A DNA stretch of 64,000 nucleotides from Macrostomum lignano (lineage: Eukaryota): contig NIVC01000001.1 of assembly GCA_002269645.1 (NCBI GenBank), forward strand, positions 1,550,001 to 1,614,000, in the 5' to 3' direction. The notes under the pieces were generated by a model, which did no database searches, was not told the origin of the DNA, and saw nothing but the letters and a program-made list of their open reading frames with translations. Each line of letters opens with the position of its first letter. The first letter of the stretch is position 1. This document shows, one piece after another, positions 4,470 to 30,806 of this stretch. Position numbers and translations under genes: made by a program.

Positions 4470-4933
4470 CTACTTTTCAGTAGAGCCGCTACGCTTCATT
4501 TCCTCAGGTAGAATCGCATGGTTCTACTTTTTGTGTGCTTACTATAATTGCTCCGCATCTTGCATGTCAGGAAGTGAGGTTCATATTATCTTCCAGAAAG
4601 CAGTTGATCTTCATTAGAAGCACATCGGATGGCAGACAATTTACGGAAATGGCAGTATCTGCGTGGCGCCTGTGCCTGTATGAATTATTTACATGTTGCT
4701 AGCATTGGGATTCTTGCCACGCAGAAACGATTCCTGATCTTCCTCGACACGTACTCCCATAAAAATCTGCACGGCATCCAACAGCCGCGGAGTCCATATA
4801 ATGGGTCGCTTCTTCATTGGCTACCGCTGCATGCAGCCTCTACAAACGCTTTAAAAGAAAAGAAACTTGCGAAGACGACTCACAAAAACTCAAACACCGA
4901 TTCAACTCACAAAACTCAAGAGAAACGAAAGAC

Positions 4934-5992
4934 ATGCTGACGGATCTGATTTTTTCTCTGCTGCAGGTGCTGTTTGCAGTCGCTGGTCGAGCCGAAGCTT
5001 CAAGCGGCTGTGCAACGCGCCACACTCTGCAGCCGCTGCACAGCGACTCCTGCGTGCCGGACGCCGACCTGCAGCGTCAACTGCGGCTGCCCAACGCGCA
5101 GCTCATGCCAGGCGCCTTTGATGCGAAGTCCTGCGCGATGGCCTGCGCTTTCCGACCGAGCGCGTGCGCGGTCGCTCAGTTCCGCTTCGTGGCCCGCCTG
5201 TGTCACGTGACTGCGGACCTGCCGCGACCTGCCAGCGAGGCGGAGGCGGACGGCACGGCGAGCCGCGGCGACTGCGTGGCGACGCTGCTGAGACGCGACG
5301 CTTCCGGAGCGACCGGCTGGCAGTTCGCCGCTCGGCTGTCGGCCTTCTTCGACTTCCGCATCTCCGACCGGAACCTCGGCATTGTCGGTGTCAGCTCGCC
5401 GCTCTCCGCGCCGGCGCGGCTCGGCGGTACCGCCATGCGCAACGCGTCGGGCGCCGTGCTGCCCGGTCGGCTCGACTCGTTCGTGAAGATCGGCGTAGCG
5501 CCGCCGGGCTTTCAGGCCTTTGAATCGTCGTCGAAGGAGTACACCTTCTTCTTCAGCATCGCGGGAATGCCCAGCGTTTCTAGAGGCCAGACGTACCTGC
5601 TTCGAATCGTGCCTTCCAGCAATCCAACCAGTAAATTCTGCTCGTTCGCGTATTTTTCGGATGGTGACATGAGGTTCGCCAACTTGTTCACTGAAACAAT
5701 CGGCTACGTGACCGTCAACTCAATGCCGCTGGTTGCAAAGCAGAAGTTTTTTATTGGTGCAACCTATAGCAATGCTACGGCTGCCTCCACTGCTCTCTTC
5801 AATGGCACGGCTTACTCTGTCACGCAGTATAACAGCTACACTCTCAGTGCCGACACTGTTTTCGACGAGATCCGGCTTGGATCAGAAGGAACAGGTGATG
5901 TATACTCTTTTAAGGGAACAATAATCTGCTTTGCCATGGCTTCAGTGGCCCTGTCGCCTGAAGAATTCCAGGCCTTGGGCTCCGTCTGCTAA
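4934..5992 (+). CDS. secreted PAN/apple-like + LamG/ConA-like jelly-roll protein, copy 1 (352 aa, intronless)
   Basis: ATG 4934 begins signal peptide MLTDLIFSLLQVLFAVAGRAEA. Cys pattern SCAMAC..RPSAC......LC fits PAN/apple. C-terminal FIGATY..LFNG..DEIRLG..FKGTIICF..ALSPEEFQAL fits Laminin_G_3/ConA-like domains. Stop TAA 5990-5992. Confidence 0.8.
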   Translation: MLTDLIFSLLQVLFAVAGRAEASSGCATRHTLQPLHSDSCVPDADLQRQLRLPNAQLMPGAFDAKSCAMACAFRPSACAVAQFRFVARLCHVTADLPRPASEAEADGTASRGDCVATLLRRDASGATGWQFAARLSAFFDFRISDRNLGIVGVSSPLSAPARLGGTAMRNASGAVLPGRLDSFVKIGVAPPGFQAFESSSKEYTFFFSIAGMPSVSRGQTYLLRIVPSSNPTSKFCSFAYFSDGDMRFANLFTETIGYVTVNSMPLVAKQKFFIGATYSNATAASTALFNGTAYSVTQYNSYTLSADTVFDEIRLGSEGTGDVYSFKGTIICFAMASVALSPEEFQALGSVC

Positions 5993-9300: not shown

Positions 9301-10574
9301 TATGGCTACTGTAGCGCCGCCCCGCCGCAGCCCGTGGCCAGTGAACTCACATGGCGTCAAACCCGCCGATGTGCACAACGAGCGAAGCCTACCGTCAAAA
9401 ATACAAGCCGTCAGAGGCGTGTTTGAGCATTCATTTATATACTTATATGTATACGATATTTCCTATATTCCTGTTTTCTGACTAATTCAAAATCTTTATT
9501 TATCTTCACTTTCTTTTATTGCTACTCTCTTCAGTAGTGCCGCAACGCTTCATTTGCTCAGGTAGGCTCTCGTATGGTTCTACTTCTTGCGTACTTTAGT
9601 ATAATTGCTCCATGTTTGCACGAGTGGGTGAGGTTCATACTCTTTTCCAGATAGCAGTCGATATTCATTAGAAGTAGCTCGTACATCGACTCGATGAGAT
9701 AAACGAGCGATTTTGAGGAAGAAAATTTAGGGATTACGGCAGTACCTGTCATACGTCGTACGGCAGGCTCTCCTAAAAATACACAAGTGCAAGAGCCAAT
9801 AGCCTCCGGTTCTAGACGGTCTCCAGGCAAACTCATTAACCTCGGCCTCTCCGTTCGTCTACGATTAACTTAGAGAATTTAGGATAAGGGAAAAACTGTA
9901 ATAAAAATTGGGTAGCACAGGTTGCACTAATAGGAGTCGTGCCTCAAAAGAACCTGCAGTCAAGACCATCGCACATTGTAAGAAATACTAGTAATGAGGT
10001 AATGGGGTAATGTGGGTATTTTACTATCTCCTAATATTTGTTAAACTGTCATTTGTGCTACTCCAATTAATTTTTTGATATTAAGGATTGGACAAGTCAT
10101 TTTTCTCTAAATTCCTGTCCTTATTCTTTAATTTCTTATGCTATGATAAGGGGAATGTCTGGGCTCCTAGTGGCAGAGCTAGCGAACTACATGACATCAG
10201 TATCTACAAAGATTAAAACAAGAATAAACCAGTAGTCTCGATCACACGGGAGCCATTCCACTAGCAATGGGATCCATGGACACACTTTCTTTCGAGGTGG
10301 GCATGTTCGAAGTCGAGGCCTGAAGTCGACTCAGTATGTGTGGGGGGGGGGGGAACAGAAGATCGTACCAAGGACAACTAGTGGTCCTTGGATCGTCCAT
10401 GTCGTAACAAAACTGCACGGCATCCAACAGCAGCGGAGTCTATTAGCAGGTCGCTTCTTCATTGGCTACCGCTGCATGCAGCCTCGGAAAACGCTTTATA
10501 AGGGTACCAAACTTGCGAAAACGACTCAAACACCGATTCAACTGACTTAACGTGACTCAAGAAAAACAAACGAC

Positions 10575-11645
10575 ATGCAGACGGATCTGATTTTTCCTCT
10601 GCCTCTGCTGCAGCTGCTGTTGCTGGCTGTCGCTGGTCGAGCTGAAGCTGCAAGCGGCTGTGCAACGCGCCACACTCTGCAGCCGCTGCACAGCGACTCC
10701 TGCGTGCCGGACGCCGACCTGCAGCGCCAGCTGCGGCTGCCGAACGTGCAGCTCATGCCGGGCGCCTCGGACGCGAAGTCCTGCGCGATGGCCTGCGCTC
10801 TCCGACCGAGCGCGTGCGCGGTCGCCCAGTTCCTCTTCGTCGCCCGGCTGTGTCACGTGACTGCGGAGCTGCCGCGACCGGCCAGCGAGGCGGAGGCGGC
10901 CGGCACGGCGAGCCGCGGCGACTGTGTGGCGACGCTGCTGAGACGCGACGCTTTCGGAGCGACCGGCTGGCAGTTCGCCGCTCGGCTGTCGGCCTTCTTC
11001 GACTTCCGCATCTCCGACCGGAACCTCGGCATTGTCGGTGTCGGCTCGCCGCTCTCCGCGCCGGCGCAGCTCGTCGGTACCGCCATGCGCAACGCGTCGG
11101 GCGCCGTGCTGCCCGGTCGGCTCGACTCGTTCGTGAAGATCGGCGTGGCGCCGCCAGGCTTTCAGGCCTTTGCTTCGTCCCCAAAGGAGTACACATTCTT
11201 CTTTAGCCTAACGGGCATGCCGAATATCCCGACTGCAAATCTCCATCTTCTGCGAATCGTGAATTCCGACAACCCCACCGGACCGTTCTGCTCATTCATG
11301 TTCTTCACTAGCGACAGCAAGCTGAAGTTCACCAACTTTTTCTCTGAAACAATCGGCTACGTGACCGTCAACTCGATGCCGCTGGTTGCTCAGCAGAAGT
11401 TTTTTGTTGGTGCAACCTATAGCAATGCTACGGCTGCCTCCACTGCTCTCTTCAATGGCACGGCTTACTCTGTCACGCAGTATAACAGCTACACTCTCAG
11501 TGCCGACACTGTCTTCGACGAGATCCGGCTTGGATCAGAAGGAACAGGTGATGTATACTCTTTTAAGGGAACGATAATCTGCTTTGCCATGGCTTCAGTG
11601 GCCCTGTCGCCTGAAGAATTCCAGGCCTTGGGCTCCGTCTGCTAA
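10575..11645 (+). CDS. secreted PAN/apple-like + LamG/ConA-like protein, copy 2 (356 aa, intronless)
   Basis: Signal peptide MQTDLIFPLPLLQLLLLAVAGRAEA. Near-identical to copy 1 except for one internal block. Confidence 0.82.
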   Translation: MQTDLIFPLPLLQLLLLAVAGRAEAASGCATRHTLQPLHSDSCVPDADLQRQLRLPNVQLMPGASDAKSCAMACALRPSACAVAQFLFVARLCHVTAELPRPASEAEAAGTASRGDCVATLLRRDAFGATGWQFAARLSAFFDFRISDRNLGIVGVGSPLSAPAQLVGTAMRNASGAVLPGRLDSFVKIGVAPPGFQAFASSPKEYTFFFSLTGMPNIPTANLHLLRIVNSDNPTGPFCSFMFFTSDSKLKFTNFFSETIGYVTVNSMPLVAQQKFFVGATYSNATAASTALFNGTAYSVTQYNSYTLSADTVFDEIRLGSEGTGDVYSFKGTIICFAMASVALSPEEFQALGSVC

Positions 11646-12759
11646 CCTTACAGCCGCTACGAGCGAACAAGCTTACGGACTGAACAGAAAGAAACTCGGG
11701 ATATCTTTTATGACGTGATTTTTAAATATTCGTGACTACAACCCTGAGCGTTTTTTATTGCTTTATGGCTGTGTCTTTTGATGCTGTTTATCCTTTCTTC
11801 TTGTGTTAAAACAATTTCCTTCTTTGTGTCTTTTTCGTGTTAAAATTTTATGTTGTTTAATTAATTTTTAAAGCTTAAAATAGTTTTTTGGTTAATAAAT
11901 ATTTCCCGTTGCTGTCTTTTGTTTAAGTTTTTGTTACTGTTTATCTTAGGTTTTCTTTTCGTTAAAGCAAGTCGTCGCTGTTGCTGCTTTTTTTAAAACA
12001 AAAATTTGTTGCTGCTATTGGAAAAATATTGCCGATGTTGTTATCTTTTTTCTCGTCTTTTATTCTTGTTGACACTTGTAGGATACGAACAATTAAAATT
12101 TTTTTTCTTATAATTTTTAATAACACATTAACTCCGCATCTTGTTTTATCTGGTTTTTAGAGAATATAGACTAACGCTAATTTCAGACTCTGCTTCGCAC
12201 CTTTTTATTCGTGAAAGATGCATTCTGGACTTTATTATTAAGAACTTAAAGAAGCTTACTTTTTATGGCAGACTTCAGAGGCTCTTCGTACGATAGTCTT
12301 GGAAGGGGAAATTTTTATAGATTAAAAAGATAGACACTCTCCTTCAATTCAATTTTTTGGATTTTAAAAAAATTAAATGAAATAAATTTATGAGTGCAAT
12401 TTAATGAACTTAAACTTTAGCTAAATCTCAACTAAATCAACGAAATCATTAAATGTACTAATAATTTTATATCAAAATTAAAATCTAAAATGTACAATGA
12501 AATCATTAAAATTTTACATGTACACAGCATACTTGCATACTGCCTAGCCTAGTGCTTTCCTCTCGCAACTGCATAGTTGAGTGTGGAAACTTCCCAAAAA
12601 GTGGATGCAAGTTGCAACACAAAACATTTGCTTCCTCTTTCTCTCTCCCATTTACAAGCTTAAAGAAGATGCAGTTTTTGTTCGTTATTATATAGGAAAG
12701 CCTAGCCCGGCTTAAAACCAGCCAATTAAGTATAGCCAAAGTATATTATAGTATAGGAA

Positions 12760-13860: not shown

Positions 13861-14101
13861 ACCAGGGGCGCCAGCACCAGGGGCGCCAGCACCAGGGGCG
13901 CCAGCACCAGGGGCGCCAGCACCAGGGGCGCCAGCACCAGGGGCGCCAGCACCAGGGGCGCCAGCACCAGGGGCGCCAGCACCAGGGGCGCCAGCACCAG
14001 GGGCGCCAGCACCAGGGGCGCCAGCACCAGGGGCGCCAGCACCAGGGGCGCCAGCACCAGGGGCGCCAGCACCAGGGGCGCCAGCACCAGGGGCGCCAGC
14101 A
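13861..14101. repeat. 15-bp minisatellite (CCAGGGGCGCCAGCA)x16
   Basis: Perfect tandem copies. Reverse complement of the unit family at 23245-24089. Confidence 0.95.
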
Positions 14102-14640
14102 CTTCATTTGGTCACGTATTACTTACTTAATTTGAGTGGTTGCCAAAGCTATCGCATGGGAGCGTCATGTGCTTTTACTAAGCCGATGGAGGGAGGGCCA
14201 CGGCTCCCTTCCCCCTCCACTGGCTACGTCCCAGACACGCACAGAGTTCGGTATGGTATTGGTATGCAAGGGCACACTACAGTGGCTGATCGTATTGGGC
14301 GAAATAAAGTTTCAATCGTTAAAAAATATTGAGAGAAGCATTAGCCACAAAACAAATGCATTATTAACAAATCTATAAAGAAATTCGATTATAAAGAATC
14401 CAAGAAATAACTAATATATTTTCATGATCATCATATTAACTTGTGACCTTCGTCACACTTAGAAGCAATCGATAATAATGTTACAGGAAAATGTTGAATT
14501 TTACCACGGCTTCCCCAAGCAAGCGTAAAAACAAAGCTTTACTTGTGTTACACAAATTTGCACGATTTTGAATCGGCAATCAAAAAAGCAACAAAAAGCA
14601 CAAAAAAGTGGCCCAGGAAATTTTCTACCATTGTCGGAAT

Positions 14641-14955: not shown

Positions 14956-17211
14956 ATAGGAGAAGTTCTGCTTGGCTGGCACCTCAGGCTGGTAGTGCGC
15001 CGGACCCGGCAACGACGTGGCGTCGCCCACAGCCCGGCCGGCCCAACGCGACGTGTTGCTAAGGAACATGGAGCTGCTCATGTAGTGCTTGGACACTGGC
15101 CTTGGCGCCAGCTCGTACTGGCCCGGTCCCGGCAGCGGCGCCTGCGGCGGCAGTGGCAGCGCGGGAGCGGACAGGCACAGGTAGTGCTGCATGGGGAACT
15201 GGAAGCCGCCCCGCTTGGCCTGCCTGTCCGGCTCGTGATCGTACGCACCGGGCCCCGGATTGTCCGTCGGCTTCGGGCCCGGACGGCGCGGCCCGGACGG
15301 ACGGAAGCAGGAGACTGGGGCGCGGGAGGCTTCGCCGATCAGGCGGTCGGCGCGGGTCACGTCGTAGGCTCCGGGGCCGGGTCGGCGGGCGGCGTCGCCG
15401 TGGCCAATGGGCTCGCGACCGGATGAGGATCTGCGGGCAGCGGGGTCCACTCTCTCAATGTCTACTGTGTCCACTCTCTCTCTAATGTCTACTGTGTCCA
15501 CTCTCTCTCCAATGTCTACTGTGTCCACTCTCTCTCATATCTACTGTGTCCACTCTCTCTCCAATGTCTACTGTGTCCACTCTCTCTCTAATGTCTACTG
15601 TGTCCACTCTCTCTCTAATGTCTACTGTGTCCACTCTCTCTCTAATGTCTACTGTGTCCACTCTCTCTCTCTAATGTCTACTGTGTACACTCTCTCTCTA
15701 CTGTCTACTGTGTCCACTCTCTCTCTAATGTCTACTGTGTCCACTCTCTCTCTAATGTCTACTGTGTCCACTCTCTCTCTCTAATGTCTACTGTGTCCAC
15801 TCTCTCTACTGTCTACTGTGTCCACTCTCTCTCTAATGTCTACTGTGTCTACTCTCTCTCTAATGTCCACTGTGTCCACTATCTCTCTAATGTCTACTGT
15901 GTCCACTCTCTCTAATGTCTACTGTGTCCACTCTCTCTAATATCTACTGTGTCCACTGTCTCTAATGTCTACTGTGTCCACTGTCTCTAATGTCTACTGT
16001 GTCCACTGTCTCTTATGTCTACTGTGTCCACTGTCTCTCTAACATCAACTGTGTCCACTCTCTCTCCAATGTCTACTGTGTCCACTCTCTCTAATGTCTA
16101 CTGTGTCCACTGTCTCTAATGTCTACTGTGTCCACTGTCTCTTATGTCTACTGTGTCCACTGTCTCTCTAACATCTACTGTGTCCACTCTCTCTTTAATG
16201 TCCACTGTGTCCACTCTCTCTCTAATGTCTACTGTGTCCACTCTCTCTCTAATGTCTACTGTGTCCACTCTCTCTCTAATGTCTACTGTGTCCACTCTCT
16301 CTAATGTCTACTGTGTCCACTCTCTCTACTGTCTACTGTGTCCACTCTCTCTCTAATGTCTACTGTGTACACTCTCTCTCTAATGTCCACTGTGTCCACT
16401 ATCTCTCTAATGTCTACTGTGTCCACTCTCTCTCTAATGTCTACTGTGTCCACTCTCTCTCCAATGTCTACTGTGTCCACTCTCTCTAATGTCTACTGTG
16501 TCCACTCTCTCTAATGTCTACTGTGTCCACTCTCTCTCTCTCTCCTCTCTCTAATGTCTATTGTTTCCACTCTCTTTAGCACAATATTTATTGAAAAATT
16601 AATTTCAATCCAATCTGAACTAACTTGAACACGCTAGCCAGGTCGCGAGTTCGATTCTCCCTGAGCCGAGCCAGAGCGTTGAGCGTATTGTACCGGTTCG
16701 GCCCCGGACCGTCCGAGGCCGCTCCAGCCGGTCGGGGCACCGCGATCGGCGGGTGGAAGCTGCTGGTTGCGCTGGCCCGATTGAAGTCGGCCCTGCTGCC
16801 GACTCTGCCGGTGTCGCCGATGTTGTAGCCGGCGGGCCCGGGACCGACTGGGACGCCGCCGCCGCCGCCTCCGTCGGTCCGTCGGACGGTTTTGCTGGCG
16901 AGGCCGCCCGTGCCGCGTTTGCCGTAGGACGGCGAATCTGTTGCAACCGAGGAGCCACCGCTGCCCAGAGCGTAATAATTTGGCGCCGGAGTCACGTGAT
17001 TGGACAGGTCGTAGTTAAACCGCTTAGCGGTGGACATGAAACCTTTGCTGTCGGCCGTGTCAATCACGACCGTCTGGTATTTGCTGGGGATTGAGGAGTT
17101 CGGCTTGGCGGCCGAGTAGCCTTTTCGGACACGGTTCTGATTGCCGTTTGGGTTGCCATGGATACGCTTGACAACTGAGTCATTGTGTAAGATTTGTACG
17201 CTGTCGGACAT
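14929..17211 (-). CDS. STPG1: sperm-tail PG-rich repeat protein 1-like (362 aa); exons 17211-16625, 15430-14929
   Basis: SSIPSKY..KGFMSTAKRF, PGPxxY repeats, and C-terminal LPLPPQAPLPGPGQYE..HYMSSSMFLSNTSRW..LPGPAHYQPE..KQNFSYN match STPG1/MAPO2. Donor AA|GTTAGT and acceptor CCGCAG|A, both phase 2. Total 1089 nt. Confidence 0.85.
15445..16575. repeat. ~25-bp intronic minisatellite GTCCAC(TC)nTAATGTCTACTGT
   Basis: Fills almost the whole STPG1 intron, with a variable (CT)n core. Confidence 0.95.
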
Positions 17212-19685: not shown

Positions 19686-20112
19686 AAGCGCGATTTAAGT
19701 TCTTAATTCTGAAGTTCAAGTTCTCCAGTACTCAAGTTCACTGTTTTGTAAATATTGAGCCACTTCTAGACTCCCGCGAAAGACTCTGCAATGTCGCAAC
19801 TTCATGAAATCCAGTTTCAACCAGCTAGTGCCTATCGTGCAAGAAGCCATGCAGCAGGTAGAGATGCACTTTATGGCTAAAAAATTCACAAGAGGACAGA
19901 TACTTCACAAGTCATCCCAAGCCTTCCCGCGACTGTTTTTCCCTCATTCTAACCCTAATTGGGCCATTGGCTAGATGGGCACTCACGGCTCTTCAAGGCT
20001 CACTATGGGGGGGGGGCTTTCATGCTACACGCAGTCGAGTATTTATCCAGATCCGCTTAGAAACAATGGAGAGAATTTTGCCAATCCGTTTCAGCTCCCG
20101 CAAGGCAATCAT

Positions 20113-21171
20113 ATGGCGGCTCTCGCAGCCATCGCTACTCTGCTGCTGTACGCCCAGCTGTCGCCAGCTTCAGCGAATGGCTTCAGCGGCGGCTGCCAGG
20201 CCCGGCACTCAGTCCGACCGCTGCACAGCGACTCCTGCGTGCCGGACGCCGACCTGCAGCGTCAGCTGCGGCTGCCCAACGCGCAGCTTCTGACGGGCGT
20301 CTCCGATGCGGAGTCCTGCGCGCTGGCCTGCGCTCTCCGACCGAGCGCGTGTGCAGTCGCCCAGTTCCGCTTCGTAGCCCGGCTGTGTCACGTGACTGCG
20401 GAGCTGCCGCGACCGGCCAGCGAGGAGGAGGCAGCCGGCACGGCGAGCCGCGGCGACTGCGTGGCGACGCTGCTGAGACAGGGCGGAGATGCTCCGACCG
20501 CCTGGTCGCTCGCCTCCCGACTCAAAGTGTTCATCGACTTCCGCGTCTCCGAGTTGAACCTCGTCGCCGGGTCGGCTGGCTGGCCGCCGGCCGCTCAGCT
20601 CACTGGCGCCGCGTCTCGCAACTCCAGTGGCGCCTGGCTGCCCGGCCTGCAGACCGCCCACGTGCTGATGCGCCTGCCGCCTCCCGGCTACCAGGCGGTG
20701 GCCGCTGCCAGCCAGGAGTTCGCCTACTTCTTCAAGGTGCTGGCCGACCCGCCAGCATCGGCGAGCTCGCAGCGCCACTTCATGCGCATCCTGTCAGCCA
20801 GCGACGGCAGCCAGCTGAGCGCCTTTGTCTATACTGTGGGCGGCCGGGTCCGCTTCTCCAACCTGTTCACCCGGCCGGATCCGTTCGAGGCCGTCGCCGA
20901 TGTTGTCTACGCCGGCGGCAGGAGTCTCGCCTTCGGCGTGGCCTACTACAACTCCACGGGCCGCGCTCGGGTGTACTTTAACGGCACCCTGATGAGTGCG
21001 ACAACATTCACTCCGACAGATACGCTGAACGCCGCTGTCCAGTACGACGAGATCCGATTGGGCTACGCCGGTTCCGAATCGATTTGCCTCAGGGGCTATC
21101 TAGTGTGCTTCGCTATGGCGCCCGCGGCCCTGACTGGGGATGAGTTCCAGCAGCTTAGCGACAGGTGCTGA
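20113..21171 (+). CDS. secreted PAN/apple-like + LamG/ConA-like protein, copy 3 (352 aa, divergent LamG)
   Basis: ATG 20113 begins signal peptide MAALAAIATLLLYAQLSPASA. PAN module near-identical to copies 1/2. LamG keeps FIDFR, YFNGT, YDEIRLG and CFAMAPAALTGDEFQQL but is otherwise diverged. Confidence 0.82.
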   Translation: MAALAAIATLLLYAQLSPASANGFSGGCQARHSVRPLHSDSCVPDADLQRQLRLPNAQLLTGVSDAESCALACALRPSACAVAQFRFVARLCHVTAELPRPASEEEAAGTASRGDCVATLLRQGGDAPTAWSLASRLKVFIDFRVSELNLVAGSAGWPPAAQLTGAASRNSSGAWLPGLQTAHVLMRLPPPGYQAVAAASQEFAYFFKVLADPPASASSQRHFMRILSASDGSQLSAFVYTVGGRVRFSNLFTRPDPFEAVADVVYAGGRSLAFGVAYYNSTGRARVYFNGTLMSATTFTPTDTLNAAVQYDEIRLGYAGSESICLRGYLVCFAMAPAALTGDEFQQLSDRC

Positions 21172-21234: not shown

Positions 21235-21790
21235 AGGTAGCTTAGTAGTATAGTAGTTTAGTAGTATAGTAGCTTAGTAGTATAGTAGCTTAGTAGTATA
21301 GTAGTTTAGTAGTATAGTAGTTTAGTAGTATAGTAGCTTAGTAGTATAGTAGCTTAGTAGTATAGTAGCTTAGTAGTATAGTAGCTTAGTAGTATAGTAG
21401 CTTAGTAGTATAGTAGTTTAGTAGTATAGTAGCTTAGTAGTATAGTAGCTTAGTAGTATAGTAGCTTAGTAGTATAGTAGCTTAGTAGTATAGTAGCTTA
21501 GTAGTATAGTACCTTAGTAGTATAGTAGCTTAGTAGTATAGTAGTTTAGTAGTATAGTAGCTTAGTAGTATAGTAGCTTAGTAGTATAGTAGCTTAGTAG
21601 TATAGTAGCTTAGTAGTATAGTAGCTTAGTAGTATAGTAGCTTAGTAGTATAGTAGCTTAGTAGTATAGTAGCTTAGTAGTATAGTACCTTAGTAGTATA
21701 GTAGCTTAGTAGTATAGTAGCTTAGTGGTATAGTAGCTTAGTATTGTAGCTTAGTAGTATAATACCTTAGTAGTATAATACCTTAGTAGT
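21235..21790. repeat. 16-bp minisatellite AGCTTAGTAGTATAGT
   Basis: About 34 tandem copies starting ~60 bp after the copy-3 stop. Confidence 0.95.
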
Positions 21791-22162
21791 ATATTATTTT
21801 AGTAGTCAAGTAGCTTAAAACGAACTATTCGGAATTTAATTTGCGCCACTCAAACAAAAAAATATTATTGAATTTTTCGATTTCAAAATCGTACTTGCTT
21901 TGTCTTTTTTTCAACAATTAATTTGTCAAACTGGTTCTGTCGCCAAAAAACAGAATTAAAGTTATCCATCAAAACATGCATAAAATGTAATGAACTTTTC
22001 ACTGAAATACTTTTCTGTCGTAGCTAAACTCTTTGAGGCAGTTTTAATAACTGGGAAAGAAAAGACATGATGTTTTTTTAAATTTTGTGCACTGTCTCTG
22101 CCAGACAAATTATTCTGGGCGATCTAAGCAAGTTTCTATTTTCTTATATATTTTTTATATGA

Positions 22163-22424
22163 CAGTCAGTCAGTCAGTCAGTCAGTCAGTCAGTCAGTCA
22201 GTCAGTCAGTCAGTCAGTCAGTCAGTCAGTCAGTCAGTCAGTCAGTCAGTCAGTCAGTCAGTCAGTCAGTCAGTCAGTCAGTCAGTCAGTCAGTCAGTCA
22301 GTCAGTCAGTCAGTCAGTCAGTCAGTCAGTCAGTCAGTCAGTCAGTCAGTCAGTCAGTCAGTCAGTCAGTCAGTCAGTCAGTCAGTCAGTCAGTCAGTCA
22401 GTCAGTCAGTCAGTCAGTCAGTCA

Positions 22425-22475
<51 letters not shown>

Positions 22476-22778
22476 AGTCAGTCAGTCAGTCAGTCAGTCA
22501 GTCAGTCAGTCAGTCAGTCAGTCAGTCAGTCAGTCAGTCAGTCAGTCAGTCAGTCAGTCAGTCAGTCAGTCAGTCAGTCAGTCAGTCAGTCAGTCAGTCA
22601 GTCAGTCAGTCAGTCAGTCAGTCAGTCAGTCAGTCAGTCAGTCAGTCAGTCAGTCAGTCAGTCAGTCAGTCAGTCAGTCAGTCAGTCAGTCAGTCAGTCA
22701 GTCAGTCAGTCAGTCAGTCAGTCAGTCAGTCAGTCAGTCAGTCAGTCAGTCAGTCAGTTAGTCAGTCATTCAGTCAGT
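22163..22778. repeat. (CAGT)n microsatellite, ~150 units
   Basis: Near-perfect tetranucleotide run with rare variants. Confidence 0.97.
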
Positions 22779-23244: not shown

Positions 23245-24089
23245 GTGCCCAGGGCGCCCTTTGTGCTGGCGCCCTTTGTGCTGGCGCCCCTGGTGCTGGC
23301 GCCCCTGGTGCTGGCGCCCCTGGTGCTGGCGCCCCTGGTGCTGGCGCCCCTGGTGCTGGCGCCCCTGGTGCTGGCGCCCCTGGTGCTAAAGCCCCTGGTG
23401 CTAAAGCCCATGGTGCTAAAGCCCCTGGTGCTAAAGCCCCTGGTGCTAAAGCCCCTGGTGCTAAAGCCCCTGGTGCTAAAGCCCATGGTGCTAAAGCCCA
23501 TGGTGCTAAAGCCCCTGGTGCTAAAGCCCCTGGTGCTGGCGCCCCTGGTGCTGGCGCCCCTGGTGCTGGCGCCCCTGGTGCTAAAGCCCCTGGTGCTAAA
23601 GCCCATGGTGCTAAAGCCCCTGGTGCTAAAGCCCCTGGTGCTAAAGCCCCTGGTGCTAAAGCCCCTGGTGCTAAAGCCCATGGTGCTAAAGCCCATGGTG
23701 CTAAAGCCCCTGGTGCTAAAGCCCCTGGTGCTAAAGCCCCTGGTGCTAAAGCCCATGGTGCTAAAGCCCCTGGTGCTAAAGCCCCTGGTGCTAAAGCCCC
23801 TGGTGCTAAAGCCCCTGGTGCTAAAGCCCCTGGTGCTAAAGCCCCTGGTGCTAAAGCCCCTGGTGCTAAAGCCCCTGGTGCTAAAGCCCCTGGTGCTAAA
23901 GCCCCTGGTGCTAAAGCCCCTGGTGCTAAAGCCCCTGGTGCTAAAGCCCCTGGTGCTAAAGCCCCTGGTGCTAAAGCCCCTGGTGCTAAAGCCCCTGGTG
24001 CTAAAGCCCCTGGTGCTAAAGCCCCTGGTGCTAAAGCCCCTGGTGCTAAAGCCCCTGGTGCTAAAGCCCCTGGTGCTAAAGCCCCTGGT
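23245..24089. repeat. 15-bp minisatellite CTGGTGCT(GGC/AAA)GCCC, ~56 copies
   Basis: Blocks of GGC, AAA and CCAT variants, with a homogeneous 3' end. Confidence 0.95.
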
Positions 24090-24297: not shown

Positions 24298-27200
24298 TTA
24301 ATGTTTCTCTTCGATTTCAATTTTCTCTCGCCGCCAGTGGCGCCAGTAGCGCAGTATGACTCGCGCCGCGGCGACCTGGCGCTGGAGCTCGGCTGTGTTT
24401 GTAATCACGACTCGCTCGGACTTGGCCTTGCCGGCCGGCCGTATCTCGGACAGCGCCTCCTCGGCCTCATCGCCAGTGCCAAGGAAGTTCTTGGTAAGCG
24501 CGTCCAGCAGGTCAACGCAGTAGACAGTGTCGCCTTCGCAGATTGGGACGCAAAGGCTGGCCAGTTTGATCTTGTTCGGAGCCGGGATCTGCGAAGGGAG
24601 CGATGCGGCTGGAGTTTGTGTAATCGGGATATTTTTTCACTACCCGCGATTCGAAGTTTTACACGGACTACTTGGAGTAGAATGTTAGGGATGTGGAGGT
24701 CGAGGTGGAGTCAAACACTATTTGAATCGAATAGAGATAGGTTGGACCATAGACAACGCGACGCCATTTCTCTAACTGAGAAACCCCACTGAGAGACAAG
24801 CGAATCTAGAATCGGACATTCAGGAACTGTGCATATATATTTATAGTATTTTAAATGAGTTGATTAACATCAGAGCTACAAGTCTCTGTGCACTGTAAAG
24901 ATTCTCGAACGCTAACGAGTGCGTCATTGACAAAATTACGAGTGCGCGAGTCCCTTTTGGCCATGGACACCACAAGTCAGCGTTGAGAACTACATGATGA
25001 GAACTACACTGCCCAGATTGGAAGTGCTTGGTGCATCTTTTTATTGACTTTTTGAGTTTCTCACCCCCACTTGCGCACATTTGCCATAACCCTATTACTC
25101 GCTTACCTGCAGAGGCGGGTCCAGCTCGTCCAATAGAGTGTAGACATCTCTCAACTGGATAAATCCCCTCGCCTTCAGGTCGTACTTTTCCCACTTTTCG
25201 TAGAACAGATCGAAGTCCTCCTGCGTCAGACCTTCCTGCACGTCCTCCGTGGCCTGGCTGAAGTTTTCCAGGATCACGGCGATGTACATGTTGATGATAA
25301 CTAGGAAGCTGATCACTAGGTAGGAGATGAGGAAAACCACCGCGATGGCGTAGTTACCGCAGTCACTGTGCGGCTTCTTGTTCGGGTTGCACATCGGCGG
25401 CTCTTCGTTCATCAGGCCGTCAAGCACGCCGTCCCAGCCAGCCGACGTGCTCATCTGGAACAGCACGATCATCGCGCTGGGGAAGGTCTCGAAGTTAAAG
25501 ATCTGATCGATGCCGTTGTGATGCCGGACGTGGCTGAAGAAGGACAGGCCGACGATGCTGTAGATGAACATCACCATGAGCAGCAGGATGCCGATGTTGA
25601 ACAGAGCCGGCAGTGACACGAACAGCGAGAACAGCAGCGTCCGGATTCCGCGAGCTGACTTCACCAGCCGGAGGACGCGGCCGACGCGGAAAACGCGAAC
25701 GACTCGAATCATAGTGGGCGGCACCGGCAGCACGTACATGATGTCCTCCATGGCCCAGGTGAGCACGCTCAGCACCACAATGATAAAGTCGAATACGTTC
25801 CAAGCGAATTTGAAGTAGTGCCACCGCTGGGCGAGGAGCTTGAACACGGCCTCACCTGTGAACAGGACGATGAAGAAGCGATTCACTTGGTTGATCGCGT
25901 TGCTGAACGAAGCCGACTGGTTGTGATGCTCCACGCACATCACCACCGTGTTCAGCATGATGAAGGACATGATCACTATATCGAATTTTTGATTGCTGGT
26001 TATAACAAAGAAAAATTTAGAGATTTTCAGCTTCGGTTTCGGGATCGGCTTCTGTGGCGAGACGCTGCTCATCTTTTTCATCGCCTTGTAGTATTTCTTC
26101 TGGTCGTCCGTCATGAACATCTCCAGCGAGCCGCCGGCGCGTTTCTTCTGCATGTTGAAGTTGTCGATGATGACGCCGATGAACAGGTTGAGGGTGAAGA
26201 AGGAGCCGAAAATGATGAAGAGTACAAAGAAGAAGTACATCGGCGTGTTGGCATCGCGAGCTGGCTGCTTGCCGACTCCTGTGGAAAGCAGAAGAGTGTC
26301 CTGTTGTAGGTTGTCAAGTTCCTGCTGACAAACAGCGTAAATAAACAGAAAAGTGCGGAGTTTTTTTACTATTTTGCGTCCTGAACTGCTGCTATTACTG
26401 CTTCAGTCTGCAATAATTGCTACTCCGAAGTACATTTGTTTGATCAGCACTCAGATTGCCTGACTATTGCATAAATGGCCTTCCAAGTGATAACACTATA
26501 GTGAAGTTTGATGCAGTACGGAACCAGCACTCTAAGTCAATCATAGTAGACGTTCTTATCTGGAGTTTTTTGTCTAGACTGACAGGAAGAGCCCCGATGA
26601 TATATTCTATCTCTAAATGGCTTGCCAAACTCCGCAGTTACATCGCTATCAAATGAGCCATCAAATCGTTTCACTGACCTACACGAGAGACGAAAAAATG
26701 AATGATTTCCACATACATTTGAGCCACATCTGCGATATTGCTGCCTTCAAGATGCCTTGGGGGCCTACGTACTTAATATCATAGATATTCTGAGGAGGAT
26801 TGCACCAACCTGTTGTATCCACAGCGTCAGCGATAACCAATGTCCATCCTTTATAGGTAGAGATCTGAAACAGGGCGAGGTAGCCATTCAACACGTTGTC
26901 AAAGTTGATTCTCGAGTTCACCCAGGACACGTTGTCAAAGGCCTGGCGCATCCGCTCGCAGGACTCGACGTCGGGCACCACTTCCGGCAGTAGCCGCTCG
27001 CCAGTCTCCTTGCTGATGCACTTGAAGAACTGGCCGCCGAACAGCTGCACGCCCATGATGCTGAAGATAAGCCAAAACACCAGACACACGAGCAGCACGT
27101 TGAAGATGGACGGGATGGCTTGGATCAGGGCGTTCACCACCACGCGCATGCCCTCCCAGCGGCTGACCGCGCGCAACGGCCTCAGCGCCCGCAGAGTTCG

Positions 27201-30200
27201 CATGGCCTTGAAAGCCCCCATACTCTGGCCGGCCTCGCCGCCCAGCGAGTTCAGCACCAGGCTGATGACTGCCACATTCACGATGACGAAGTCTAGCCAG
27301 CACCAGGCGTCGCTAAAGTACTTCTTCATGCCAAATGCGAACCATTTTACCAGCATCTCGAAAGCAAAGATGATAGTGAAGCACTTGTCCATGTATTCCA
27401 GCGTCAGCTTAAGCTTTGGCCTGCGCGGCAGATTCACATCCTCGAGAGTTAGCGTTAGGCTGCTGATGGCAATCAGCGCGATGATGAATGTCTCAAAGTA
27501 GCGGTGCTCAACTAGTCGGTAGGCCCGGCAGCGCAGGCCCCACCAGAAGCGGCCAAACGCGGTTGAATCGCAGAGTCGCGCAGCGCAAGGAGCAAACAGC
27601 TTTGCCAATTTTGGTGGCAAGCAGTCCTCCGGTGTGTCCCAGTAGAGCACCTCCACTTCAGTCACCTCTGGCTCCTTATAAAAATCTGGTATCTCCGGTG
27701 GGGGAGGTGGCGTGATTTGCACTGCTGTCTTTGGATCGTCTGTCGCTGGCTGGCTGCGCTCCCCTAGAAGCAGATGATTTACACCCGAGAGGCCAAAGTT
27801 TTCTATTACCAAAGCACCGTGACGCGTTAGGGGCGACTGACCACTGCCAAGGGACAGCTCAGGATTGCTGCCGCTTATGCAGCCGCGATGTCCTTTTCCG
27901 TTGTCCGCCTTGCCTTCTTCACCATCGACTCCATCGTCTTCTTCGAACAGATCGCTGTCCGGCACCGGGCGAGCCCAGAGACGACGCTTCAGGCCGCCGA
28001 ATAGCCTTGAACCGAGGCTATTCAGCTTCAGTTTGGACCAGACAATGAAGCGATTGATTCTGTCGATGGCCTGCTGCAGCTTGTTGACCTCTTCCTCTTC
28101 TTCTTCGCGACGCTGGAGACTCTCAGAGCCGAAGCTGCTGAGTAGCAGAGCCAAGAACAAGCTCAGCACCACGAGCCCGGCAATCACCTGCGTCAGCAGG
28201 AAAAACGGTACGCAAACGAAGCCATTGAGACGCATGCAGTCCCACATGCTCTCGATCCACTCGCCACAGAGCACCCGGAACACAATCATGAAACTGTGCG
28301 TGAAGTCCACAAAGTTCCATCGTGGATAGTAGCCGTTGTACTCCGGATACAGTGTGACGTTCTTGTAGGCATTGTAGCTCTCGCCGAATAATTGCATGCC
28401 TACTACGGCGAAAATGAAGATCACAATGCCCAGAACGAACACCAGGTTTCCTAGAGCTCCCATGGTCCGGGCAATGATGGCGAACAGCAGGTTCATGGTC
28501 TGCCAGGACTTGGCCAGCTTGAACACTCGCAGCAGACGGAAAGCTCGCAGGATCGACAAGCCCTGCACATTTTGCAGCGGCAGCTCAACCAAGCTCAGCA
28601 GCACAATGGAGAAATCGAATATGTTCCAGCCGTCGAGGAAGTACACCGCCGGCCGCATACCAATGAGCTTGGAAAACGCCTCGATGGCGAAGGTGGCAGT
28701 GAAGAATAGGTTAGCGTGACTGAGAAACTCCTTGAACGACTGAGAGTTTGCTGGGACGTCCAGAGCCATAAACAGCGTGTTAACTAGGATACAAATTGTA
28801 ATGAAAAGCTCAACAAATGGATCTAAAATGAATAGATTGACGTACTTTTCAACAACCTTCCAACAGTAGCAGCACTCCCAGCTATAGCACAGCTTCTCAA
28901 GCATCACGCGCTTCCAATACTGAAACTTCTTTTCCTTTGGCGCGTCTTCATGGGCGGCAGCGACAGCGACGGCTTCGATGTCTTCAGGCATCGAGTCGGC
29001 ACGATGACAACGGCACTTGTCGCAGTCAGTATTATTGTCATCTGCAGTTATGACATTATCTCTGTCATCGTAGACTTTCTCCTTTTCAGTACTGGGTGCG
29101 TTGCAAATGATGTCATATTTCAACAGCTTCTCCGCTGCTCTGCGTGCCAGCGGCGTTCGCATTGGGGACATCAGCGCCGCTGCGGTAGCTGCCGCGTCCG
29201 GCGTCTGCGCGTTGGAGTCGTCAACAAAGGGAAAAACTGCCTCCTGCGGCGCGCAGTGGCTGCAGGATGAAGCAGCACCAGCTTCCTGGAGGTTCCCCAA
29301 CGAAAGAGACGTCGGAGATTGAAGCATCGGCTCAGCGGCAGCTTCGGCCTCCGCCTCGGCCTCGGCCTCGCGCCGTTCGTCTTCTTCTTTTCGTGCGGCA
29401 ACCTCAGCCTCTTCGTCGAGGATGTCCTGCATTCGCACTTCGTCGTAGGCCATGGCCACAATCGCCAGGATGACATTCATCAGGAAGAATGAGCCCAGCA
29501 TGATGACGAGAACAAAGAAGAAAAAATGAGGCGTACCGTTGGCTCGGATCACGATCTGGTAGAGATTTTCCCAGTAGTCTTGCGTCATCAGGCGAAAGGC
29601 ACATAGCATAGCCCAGCCGAAGTTATCAAAGTTAGTGTAGCCAAAGTTCGGATTCGCTTCGTCTGTGGTAAAGCACTGATAGCCCTGTGGGCAGGGCTGG
29701 CCTAGGCTTGAGTAGCTGCAGATGAGCGTGTCCGGATGCCAGTTGCTGCGGTTGTTGCCGTGCAAGTCCAGCTCCTGCTCTTTTATCTGCTCTAGAGTGC
29801 CCGCGTCCATCTCGGACTCGTTAAAGCCGCGCGCTTCAAGAGCAGCGGTGAAGTTGAACTCCAGTACGCACTTCTGCAGCAGCGTTCCTTTGTACATCTG
29901 CAAGCCGATGAGCGCAAAAATGCTCAGCACAAAGATTGTGAGTATGCCTACATCGCGGAGACGTTTCACAGCCTCCATGAGAGCGCCAACGATAGTCTTG
30001 AGACCGGGCACCGTGGTGACAGTCTTCAGTGCGCGTAACACTCGCAGAGATCGCAGCGCGCTCAGATTACCCAGAGTCGGAATGAAGAACATCAGGTACG
30101 CTAGGCCGATCACGATGAAATCTAGCCAGTTCCAGGCGTCTCTCAGGTAAGTAAATTCGCTCAGGATGAGACCGCGCGATACCGCTTTGATGGTCGCCTC

Positions 30201-30806
30201 GGTGGTGTAGATGGCCGTGAAAGTGTACTCCACTATCTCAGAGCTGCTGTTTCTGGCCATGAAGACGCAGTTGCAGATGATGGCCAGAAGCACCAGCAGG
30301 GAGAAGGCCGGGTGCGTCAGCACGAAGATCGCCCCTCTGCGCACCGGGTTGAAAGGCGACAGGACGAACAGCGCGTTGGTTGCTGAGAACCGGAAGATGG
30401 TCTTGTCCTTGGCGATCACAACAAAAGTCATCTTGTCCGCGTAGAATTCATCAATATCTTCCAGAGGAATTCCGCTCAGCTTCTTTACCGGAAAAATATC
30501 AGACATCGATGGCGGCAGCTTCATCCCGGCTTCCAGCTTTGCGTTTGGCCGACGCTCCTCAGACGAGCCCGGCTGGTGGGCATGCTGCTGTTGCTGCTGC
30601 TGAGGCAGCGCCGGAGGCCCGAGCCCGGTGGTCGCGTTGCCAGCCTCGGCGGCAGCGAGCGGCGTGGCGGAGTTGGGAAACGCTGAGGCGTGATGCGCCC
30701 CAAGCGCCTGGCCAAGGAAGCTGAGCTCCTCCTGGCGACGTCGGATCTTGGCCAGAGACTCTGGCACAAACTGACGAAACACGCCGGGCTGGGGCGCTGA
30801 TGGCAT
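24298..30806 (-). CDS. voltage-gated sodium channel alpha subunit, Nav1 (DEKA) type, ~1819 aa; exons 30806-26810, 26278-25107, 24588-24298
   Basis: Four repeats with S4 helices. Pore loops QDYWEN / GEWIES / YKGWT / SAGWDG give DEKA, and the inactivation motif is MFMT. Splice junctions ACAG|GTTGGT..CCACAG|GA (phase 1) and CAG|GTAAGC..TCGCAG|ATC (phase 0) keep the frame. C-terminal EF-hand and IQ-like region. Confidence 0.95.

What the first reader, a model, noticed from the sequence alone, without database searches (positions are those of the whole stretch)
20218..20478. PAN module of copy 3 recently homogenised with copies 1/2 while the rest of the gene is old
Seen: from CCGCTGCACAGCGACTCC to GCGACGCTGCTGAGAC, copy 3 is nearly identical in DNA to copies 1/2 and alternates between copy-1-like sites (CCC AAC GCG, TTC CGC, TGC GTG) and copy-2-like sites (GCT CTC, GCC CAG, CGG CTG, GAG, CCG GCC). 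The signal peptide and the whole LamG domain are far more diverged. Inference: intronless domain-level conversion producing a constant PAN module plus a variable LamG module, like a constant/variable receptor architecture built without exons.
Basis: partly seen in the sequence, partly recalled or inferred. Interest (0 to 1): 0.72.

Follow-up and report, generated by a model that had tools for sequence, protein, structure and literature searches.

The report
Gene-conversion tract in flatworm PAN–LamG paralogs
Three neighbouring intronless genes of a Macrostomum flatworm encode secreted PAN/apple plus LamG-like proteins, and a sharply bounded 261-bp stretch covering the PAN domain was copied between otherwise very old paralogs, which is a clean but ordinary case of gene conversion.

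Summary
Three intronless paralogs lie on the + strand: c1 4934-5992, c2 10575-11645 and c3 20113-21171.

- **The tract.** Over c3 20218-20478 (87 codons, the PAN/apple-like domain), c3 is 92-93% identical in DNA to c1 and c2. The rest of the gene is about 52% identical.
- **Silent sites.** The contrast holds there too. dS is 0.16-0.18 inside the tract and about 1.5 (saturated) outside. At four-fold sites, 7/50 differ inside and 27/51 outside (p=5e-5).
- **Edges.** An unsupervised maximum-chi-square scan recovers exactly these boundaries (0/300 permutations).
- **Constraint is excluded.** c1 versus c2 shows no reduced silent rate in this segment. In distant family members PAN is no better conserved than LamG.

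A non-reciprocal exchange, meaning interlocus gene conversion or an equivalent chimerising recombination, is the best explanation.

- The three PAN copies are equidistant, a star. The "alternation" of c1-like and c2-like sites is what a star gives (runs test p=0.52).
- The event is older than the latest c1/c2 homogenisation.
- c1 and c2 are themselves mosaics with an old central LamG patch.

The "constant/variable receptor" reading has no support. The host is Macrostomum lignano or a close relative. This is a new example of a known process, of modest interest.

The parts
4934..5992 (+). Paralog c1. Intronless gene of 352 aa: signal peptide, PAN/apple-like domain, LamG/pentraxin-like domain.
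   Evidence: Pfam Laminin_G_3 scores E=0.0023, below the curated cut-off.
10575..11645 (+). Paralog c2, 356 aa, same architecture as c1.
   Evidence: ORF. Pfam PAN_1 scores E=0.005 and Laminin_G_3 E=0.0097. c2 is 87% aa identical to c1.
20113..21171 (+). Paralog c3, 352 aa. The start is taken at the ATG that aligns with c1 and c2; the open frame extends upstream to 19975.
   Evidence: ORF. Pfam PAN_1 scores E=0.0018 and Laminin_G_3 E=0.046. c3 is about 50% aa identical to c1 and c2 overall.
20218..20478 (+). The exchanged tract in c3 (codons 36-122, covering Cys42 to Cys116 of the PAN-like domain).
   Evidence: It is 92-93% nt identical to c1 and c2, with dS 0.16-0.18. The maximum-chi-square segment covers columns 39.1-126.1 with 0/300 permutations reaching it. 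Four-fold sites differ at 7/50 inside against 27/51 outside.
5033..5293 (+). The homologous PAN tract in c1.
   Evidence: Coordinates.
10683..10943 (+). The homologous PAN tract in c2.
   Evidence: Coordinates.
5534..5698 (+). Old, diverged central LamG patch of c1 (alignment columns 206-262). It is flanked by segments nearly identical to c2.
   Evidence: c1-c2 differ at 56/165 nt here, with dS 1.4 and dN 0.32. The flanks have dS 0.06-0.07.
11184..11351 (+). The corresponding diverged central LamG patch of c2.
4763..4933 (+). Upstream region (promoter and 5'UTR) shared by c1 and c2 only. The c2 counterpart is 10409-10574.
   Evidence: blastn maps 4763-6003 onto 10409-11656. In the alignment, c1-c2 homology stops about 165 nt upstream of the ATG. 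The c3 upstream sequence is unrelated apart from a CATTGGCTA motif.

Best explanation
The window carries a tandem cluster of three intronless genes from a Macrostomum flatworm. Each encodes a secreted protein with a signal peptide, a PAN/apple-like domain and a LamG/pentraxin-like domain.

c3 is an old paralog of the c1/c2 pair. At some point a stretch of about 261 bp was transferred non-reciprocally between c3 and the c1/c2 lineage. The mechanism would be interlocus (ectopic) gene conversion during repair or meiotic recombination between the misaligned neighbours. The direction is unknown. The stretch runs from 6 codons before the second cysteine to 6 codons after the last PAN cysteine.

Since then the three PAN copies have drifted apart independently, giving a star-like pattern with about 7% nt divergence and dN/dS of about 0.2-0.3.

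The same process, with other tract limits and dates, has homogenised c1 with c2 over most of their length but skipped a central LamG patch of about 57 codons. Each gene is therefore a mosaic of segments of different ages.

The match between tract and domain is most simply passive. Once PAN is similar and LamG is not, only PAN offers enough identity for further heteroduplex formation. Selection may also purge conversions that scramble diverged LamG surfaces.

What is shown and what is inferred:
- Shown: the tract, its edges and its silent-site signature.
- Inferred: the mechanism, and the reason for the domain coincidence.
For: 1. **Silent sites.** dS falls about ten-fold inside the tract, from about 1.5 to 0.16-0.18. 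Four-fold sites differ at 14% inside and 53% outside, p=4.6e-5 and 2.2e-4.
2. **Edges.** The edges are found without supervision and match for both pairs. The 5' edge is abrupt: 7/8 third positions differ in the 8 preceding codons, against 12/87 inside.
3. **Internal control.** c1-c2 dS in the same segment (0.17) is not lower than in their flanks (0.06-0.07). The segment therefore has no intrinsically low silent rate.
4. **Family control.** Against the distant M. lignano paralogs P0122 and P0124, PAN is 21-25% identical and LamG 22-26%. PAN is not an especially constrained domain in this family.
5. **Codon bias cannot explain it.** GC3 is equally high (0.8-0.9) in PAN and in the adjacent LamG N-terminal part, yet the latter has dS of about 0.7.
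6. **Only the tract is shared.** The c3 promoter, 5'UTR, signal peptide and 3' flank are unrelated to those of c1 and c2.
7. **Conversion is active elsewhere in the cluster.** c1 and c2 share only the gene plus about 165 nt upstream and about 60 nt downstream. Within the gene they show segments at 0-2%, 6.5% and 34% divergence.
8. **Independent decay since the event.** In the site list, 17 of the 25 private differences are G/C to A/T relative to the two-copy majority, 5 are the reverse and 3 are G/C transversions. This is my count from that list. It fits independent mutational decay after one homogenising event.
Against: - There are only three sequences and no orthologues or further paralogs. 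Donor, recipient, date and number of events cannot be determined.
- Tree topology is not formally incongruent. PAN is an unresolved star, so the evidence is incongruent depth rather than incongruent branching.
- The higher c1-c2 divergence in PAN (17/261) than in its immediate flanks (1/111) needs extra events. Candidates are a later c1-c2 conversion on both sides of PAN, or input from unseen paralogs.
- The 3' edge is less abrupt at third positions (10/29 in the next 29 codons). An older, longer tract may underlie the young one.
- A single-assembly window cannot exclude local mis-assembly. Collapse would give 100% identity, though, not 92%.
Confidence: 0.8

Rival explanations
1. c3 was born as a chimera. 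One recombination, template-switch or duplication-fusion event joined a PAN-coding piece of the c1/c2 lineage into an older, diverged LamG gene with its own promoter and signal peptide. This would be intronless domain shuffling, not conversion between pre-existing full-length paralogs.
For: Both edges are sharp and bracket one structural domain. The promoter, signal peptide and LamG part of c3 are unrelated or very distant. The star-like PAN pattern fits a single event.
Against: - c3 aligns collinearly with c1 and c2 on both sides of the tract. Conserved residues include C28, R31, H32, the many LamG positions listed, and the shared C-terminal motif. c3 was therefore already a full-length family member with the same architecture.
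- Replacing an existing PAN is by definition a conversion-type event.
- The outcome of the two models is indistinguishable in sequence.
Confidence: 0.12
2. No exchange occurred. All three genes are uniformly old, and the PAN segment is kept similar by very strong constraint. The constraint could act on the protein and also on the nucleotide sequence, through codon bias, an embedded RNA structure, or an antisense gene.
For: - PAN amino-acid identity is high (89-91%) and dN/dS within PAN is 0.2-0.3.
- An antisense ORF at 20209-20778 overlaps the tract in c3.
Against: - Silent and four-fold sites show the same drop.
- c1-c2 dS in PAN is not reduced.
- Distant paralogs conserve PAN no better than LamG.
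- GC3 is the same in the neighbouring diverged segment.
- The antisense ORF is not conserved in c1 or c2 and overshoots the tract by 300 nt.
- The tract RNA folds no better than shuffles, with z=+0.66.
Confidence: 0.04
3. The pattern is an assembly artefact. Reads from c1 or c2 were mis-placed or consensus-polished into c3 in a repeat-rich, neopolyploid genome.
For: M. lignano is a recent polyploid with duplicated regions about 98.5% identical (PMC10733133, PMC5704211). The locus is surrounded by micro- and minisatellites.
Against: - The c3 tract carries 10 private substitutions and matches neither c1 nor c2.
- The reading frame, cysteines and both junctions are intact.
- Mis-polishing would give stretches of exact identity to one donor.
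Confidence: 0.03

Closest known systems
Interlocus (ectopic) gene conversion among tandem paralogs, giving mosaic genes. Classical examples from my own knowledge: globin, MHC, opsin, RHD/RHCE and growth-hormone clusters.
   Same: A contiguous tract with sharply lower divergence than its flanks, including at silent sites. The neighbouring paralogs lie in the same orientation. Different segments of the same genes have different ages.
   Different: Here the genes are intronless and belong to a lineage-specific flatworm family with no close relatives in databases. The tract coincides with one protein domain although no exon boundary exists.
Domain-restricted concerted evolution in paired receptors. 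Examples from my own knowledge, not tested here: Siglec-5/14, Siglec-11/16, and the CEACAM1/CEACAM3 N-domains.
   Same: Conversion keeps one extracellular binding domain nearly identical between paralogs whose remaining parts are diverged.
   Different: In those systems conversion is recurrent across lineages and has a known selective rationale: the paralogs share a ligand or pathogen but signal in opposite directions. Here only one event is documented, in one genome. The proteins are small secreted proteins with no visible signalling part, and their function is unknown.
PAN/apple plus Laminin_G_3/pentraxin-like secreted proteins. Examples are M. lignano PAA50913.1 "Apple domain-containing protein" and Ptychodera flava XP_070535747.1.
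   Same: Same domain order. The shared C-terminal motif is G-x-x-x-C-[FY]-x-[ML]...L-[ST]-x-x-E-F-x-x-L-x-x-x-C. The M. lignano relative is also intronless.
   Different: They are only 22-27% identical to c1, c2 and c3. The window's three proteins are absent from all protein collections searched.

Membership tests
Interlocus gene conversion tract | A contiguous segment between paralogs with significantly lower divergence than the rest of the alignment | tested here: met
   Maximum chi-square finds 21/262 and 18/262 differences inside against 384/782 outside. None of 300 permutations reaches this.
Interlocus gene conversion tract | The drop is present at synonymous or four-fold degenerate sites, which excludes protein-level constraint | tested here: met
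   dS is 0.16-0.18 inside and about 1.5 outside. Four-fold sites differ at 7/50 inside and 27/51 outside, p=4.6e-5.
Interlocus gene conversion tract | The segment has no intrinsically low silent rate, checked with an independent pair | tested here: met
   c1-c2 dS in the same segment is 0.17, against 0.06-0.07 in the flanking segments.
Interlocus gene conversion tract | Phylogenetic incongruence between the tract and its flanks | tested here: inconclusive
   Depth is strongly incongruent. Topology cannot be incongruent with three taxa whose PAN tree is a star, with 9, 6 and 10 private sites. The outgroups are too distant, at 22-25% aa identity.
Interlocus gene conversion tract | Donor and recipient polarity and the date of the event, from orthologues | not testable with these tools
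   No close relatives are retrievable.
PAN/apple domain (Pfam PF00024) | A match at or above the Pfam gathering score | tested here: not met
   c3 scores 18.5 bits and c2 17.1 bits against a cut-off of 21.4; c1 has no hit. Indirect support exists. The profile of the three copies hits P0123 (E=5.6e-8), which carries PAN_1 at 27 bits, and hits P0122, which UniProt names "Apple domain-containing". The best PDB match is the MIC4 apple domain, at E=0.19.
Laminin_G_3 / concanavalin-A-like lectin (Pfam PF13385) | A match at or above the Pfam gathering score | tested here: not met
   The three copies score 14.3-18.5 bits against a cut-off of 27.6. Relatives found with the profile reach 27.4 bits (P0122), 107 bits (P0123), 141 bits (P0126) and 167 bits (P0128). 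The AF2 model is too poor to test the fold, with pLDDT 36.
   The window holds only three copies, with no fragments or cassettes. LamG divergence is old, with saturated dS and dN/dS of about 0.2-0.4. c1 and c2 share almost identical LamG ends.
Paired-receptor type domain-restricted concerted evolution | Recurrent, independent conversion of the same domain in several lineages | not testable with these tools
   This needs the orthologous clusters of other Macrostomum species.

The most novel reading that the evidence does not exclude
The domain-exact tract may not be a passive accident. It could reflect selection for c3 and c1/c2 to keep the same PAN surface while carrying different LamG specificities. 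The shared surface might bind a common partner or glycan, or drive PAN-mediated oligomerisation. That would be an invertebrate, intronless, secreted-protein counterpart of paired-receptor concerted evolution.

The old central LamG patch, which conversion spared between c1 and c2, would then be the specificity-determining region.
Probability: 0.15. Interest if true: 0.5.

Novelty: new member of a known kind. Interest (0 to 1): 0.3.

Why it matters
This is a tidy, statistically clear example that conversion tracts can coincide with a protein domain in genes that have no introns at all. It documents an unannotated, lineage-specific secreted PAN-LamG family in a regeneration and sexual-selection model flatworm whose neopolyploid genome is hard to annotate.

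For anyone building gene trees or dN/dS estimates in Macrostomum families, it is a warning. Segments of one short gene can differ ten-fold or more in age. It does not reveal a new mechanism.

Tried and rejected
- **Searches for close relatives.** All of these found nothing close.
  - c3 against 5.8 billion proteins: no hit.
  - A profile of the three copies against 1.84 billion representatives: 8 weak hits and no self-hit.
  - A seven-sequence family profile: 3 hits.
  - Exact-protein contig look-ups for c1, c2 and c3, plus the long c3 ORF: none on record.
  - Reaching a homeologous locus through the neighbouring Nav channel: the entries are UniRef-only with no contigs.
- **Structure.** AlphaFold2 on the 7-sequence alignment gave pLDDT 36, so I ran no fold search. 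The PDB profile search gave only non-significant apple and pentraxin hits.
- **Antisense-gene constraint.** The 189-aa antisense ORF in c3 is not conserved in c1 or c2.
- **RNA-structure constraint.** The z-score is +0.66.
- **Patchwork (multi-tract) conversion inside PAN.** The runs test is negative.
- **Literature.** No paper on this family or on gene conversion in Macrostomum was found.
- **Not attempted.** The metagenome and prokaryote-genome DNA scans cannot contain a flatworm locus.

Full report
**What is there**

Each copy lies in an uninterrupted ORF on the + strand: c1 4934-5992 (352 aa), c2 10575-11645 (356 aa) and c3 20113-21171 (352 aa). tblastn finds no further copy or fragment in the 64 kb, even at E=10.

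By inspection, each protein starts with a hydrophobic signal-peptide-like segment. A cysteine-rich region of about 90 residues follows, then a region of about 230 residues rich in N-x-S/T sites. The protein ends in ...C-F-A-M-A...L-[ST]-x-x-E-F-Q-x-L-x-x-x-C.

**Domain identity**

Pfam gives only sub-threshold hits:
- PAN_1: E=0.002-0.005, 17-18.5 bits against a cut-off of 21.4.
- Laminin_G_3: E=0.002-0.05.

A profile of the three copies, searched against 1.84 billion representatives, finds eight weak relatives. Among them:
- P0122, M. lignano PAA50913.1, "Apple domain-containing protein". It aligns over profile positions 58-352.
- P0124, also from M. lignano.
- P0123, a Ptychodera flava protein with PAN_1, EGF and Laminin_G_3 above threshold.

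The alignment shows the shared architecture and C-terminal motif. I therefore accept "PAN/apple-like plus LamG/pentraxin-like" as the likely architecture. Formal Pfam membership was not met. The AlphaFold model was too poor to test the folds (pLDDT 36). PDB profile hits (MIC4 apple E=0.19, SAP-like pentraxin E=0.92) are only suggestive.

**Source organism**

A 1375-aa exon on the minus strand (26679-30806) is a voltage-gated sodium channel. It is 98% identical to two Macrostomum lignano UniProt entries. The window is thus from M. lignano, perhaps a homeologous copy, or from a sibling species. M. lignano is a recent hidden polyploid (PMC5704211, PMC10733133).

The distant paralog P0122 is also encoded by a single exon. 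It sits in two duplicated loci whose flanks are about 98.5% identical. That gives a yardstick for the most recent genome-wide duplication.

**Checking the observation**

In the codon alignment, columns 39-125 correspond exactly to c3 20218-20478. The table gives nucleotide identity and dS for c3 against c1 and c2.

| Segment | nt identity to c1 / c2 | dS |
|---|---|---|
| Signal peptide | 41% / 43% | 1.05-1.46 |
| 8 codons 5' of the tract | 46% / 46% | saturated |
| PAN tract (columns 39-125) | 92.0% / 93.1% | 0.177 / 0.156 |
| LamG-like part | 52% / 52% | about 1.5-1.6 |

A maximum-chi-square scan that was given no boundaries returns columns 39.1-126.1 for both pairs. None of 300 permutations reaches this value.

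**Conversion or constraint?**

The opposite is found.
- At four-fold degenerate sites in codons with identical first two bases, 7/50 differ inside the tract and 27/51 outside (p=4.6e-5). For c2-c3 the counts are 7/51 and 25/51 (p=2.2e-4).
- Third positions differ at 7/8 in the eight codons just upstream, 12/87 inside, 10/29 in the next 29 codons and 0.5-0.7 thereafter.

Three controls argue against a locally low silent rate.
1. c1 versus c2 has dS 0.17 in this same segment, higher than the 0.06-0.07 in their flanking segments.
2. GC3 is equally extreme (0.8-0.9) in the adjacent LamG N-terminal part, where c3 versus c1/c2 dS is about 0.7.
3. Against the distant paralogs P0122 and P0124, PAN is no better conserved than LamG: 21-25% against 22-26% aa identity.

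Two other possible constraints also fail.
- The antisense ORF overlapping the tract in c3 (20209-20778) is not conserved in c1 or c2.
- The tract RNA folds no better than shuffled controls (z=+0.66).

Nothing outside the tract is shared with c3. The upstream 240 nt are unrelated apart from a CATTGGCTA (inverted CCAAT) motif, and the 3' flank runs straight into a 16-mer minisatellite. A non-reciprocal transfer of about 261 bp is the only explanation that fits.

*The tract is a star.* Within the tract there are 9 sites private to c1, 6 private to c2, 10 private to c3 and 2 three-state sites. In a star, every c1-private change makes c3 look "c2-like", and every c2-private change makes it look "c1-like". 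The alternation therefore needs no patchwork. The order of site classes is random: 17 runs against 17.3 expected (p=0.52), and for the c1-like and c2-like sites alone p=0.76. By my count from the list, 17 of the 25 private changes are G/C to A/T relative to the two-copy majority. That is expected for fresh, independent mutations in a very GC-rich segment.

*"Recent" is relative.* The PAN coalescence (dS of about 0.17) is roughly one tenth of the c3 versus c1/c2 depth. It is also deeper than the c1-c2 divergence immediately around PAN (0/24 and 1/87 nt) and in the C-terminal 98 codons (6/291). It is several times deeper than the approximately 1.5% divergence between duplicated M. lignano regions.

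*c1 and c2 are themselves mosaics.* The table gives c1-c2 divergence by segment.

| Segment (alignment columns) | c1-c2 nt differences |
|---|---|
| Signal peptide (1-30) | 12% |
| 31-38 | 0% |
| PAN (39-125) | 6.5% |
| 126-154 | 1% |
| 155-205 | 6.5% |
| 206-262 | 34% (dS 1.4, dN/dS about 0.23) |
| 263-360 | 2% |

c1-c2 homology ends about 165 nt upstream of the ATG and about 60 nt after the stop. The spacers of 4.6 and 8.5 kb are otherwise unrelated.

The most economical history is as follows. All three genes are old tandem paralogs. Ectopic conversion, with varying tract limits, has repeatedly overwritten parts of them. c1 and c2 exchanged almost everywhere except the central LamG patch. 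c3 exchanged only in PAN. Alternatively, the central patch of c1 or c2 was imported from a paralog outside the window.

**The "constant/variable receptor" idea**

There are three copies and no cassettes. The LamG differences are ancient, with saturated dS and dN/dS below 1, rather than generated. c1 and c2 have nearly identical LamG ends. I see no evidence for a diversification system.

The coincidence of tract and domain is real. The tract runs from 6 residues before Cys42 to 6 residues after Cys116, and extrapolating the Pfam PAN_1 match gives roughly residues 42-119. One tract in one genome cannot distinguish selection from chance or from the self-reinforcing identity requirement of recombination.

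The closest functional analogy is domain-restricted concerted evolution in paired receptors (Siglec-5/14, CEACAM1/3). That comparison rests on my own knowledge. I give it about 15% as a real parallel.

**Verdict**

Gene conversion, or an equivalent chimerising recombination, is strongly supported. The receptor-architecture interpretation is not supported. This is a new example of a well-known process in an unannotated, lineage-specific flatworm gene family, of modest interest.

Noticed in passing
window 5534-5698 (c1) and 11184-11351 (c2): c1 and c2 are 98-99% identical on both sides of this central LamG patch of about 57 codons, but only 66% identical within it. There dS is about 1.4 and dN/dS about 0.23. 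The patch was either spared by conversion or imported from an unseen paralog.
   Followed up: partly
window 5033-5293 versus 10683-10943: c1 and c2 differ more in the PAN tract (17/261 nt) than in the segments touching it (0/24 and 1/87). This is the reverse of what constraint on PAN would give. It implies later c1-c2 homogenisation on both sides of PAN, or input from other paralogs.
   Followed up: partly
window 5700-5992 and 11352-11645 versus 20878-21171: GC3 of c1 and c2 falls from 0.83-0.93 in the first 200 codons to 0.40-0.55 in the last 100. c3 stays at 0.7-0.9 throughout. This compositional break inside a 1-kb intronless gene is unexplained.
   Followed up: no
window 13861-14102 and 23253-24089: The same 15-nt minisatellite unit (GGCGCCCCTGGTGCT, reading GAPGA/GAPGAK in one frame) occurs as two arrays in inverted orientation on either side of c3. 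One array has 16 perfect copies and the other about 56. Pfam's "Extensin_1" hit is probably just the repeat.
   Followed up: partly
window 21237-21817, 22163-22778, 15450-16539, 47275-49200: There are large tandem arrays: a 16-mer x36 starting 66 nt after the c3 stop codon, (CAGT)x154, a 27-mer x41 and a 23-mer x80. The locus is very satellite-rich, which may promote misalignment and ectopic repair.
   Followed up: no
window 25095-30806 (- strand): A voltage-gated sodium channel gene has a single 1375-aa exon plus a further 381-aa exon. It is 98% identical to two M. lignano UniProt entries. This identifies the source organism. The 2% difference suggests a homeolog or a sibling species.
   Followed up: partly
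window 4815-4823, the equivalent position upstream of c2 (about 10460), and 19965-19973: CATTGGCTA (an inverted CCAAT box) is the only upstream motif shared by all three genes. It lies 119-148 nt before the ATG. c1 and c2 also share a TATA-like TTTAAAAG/TTTATAAG.
   Followed up: no
L001 and L002 (M. lignano NIVC01003538.1 and NIVC01000193.1): The distant paralog P0122 is intronless and present in two duplicated loci. The CDS differs at 6/1017 sites, all silent, and the flanks are about 98.5% identical. This is a useful yardstick for the recent genome duplication.
   Followed up: yes
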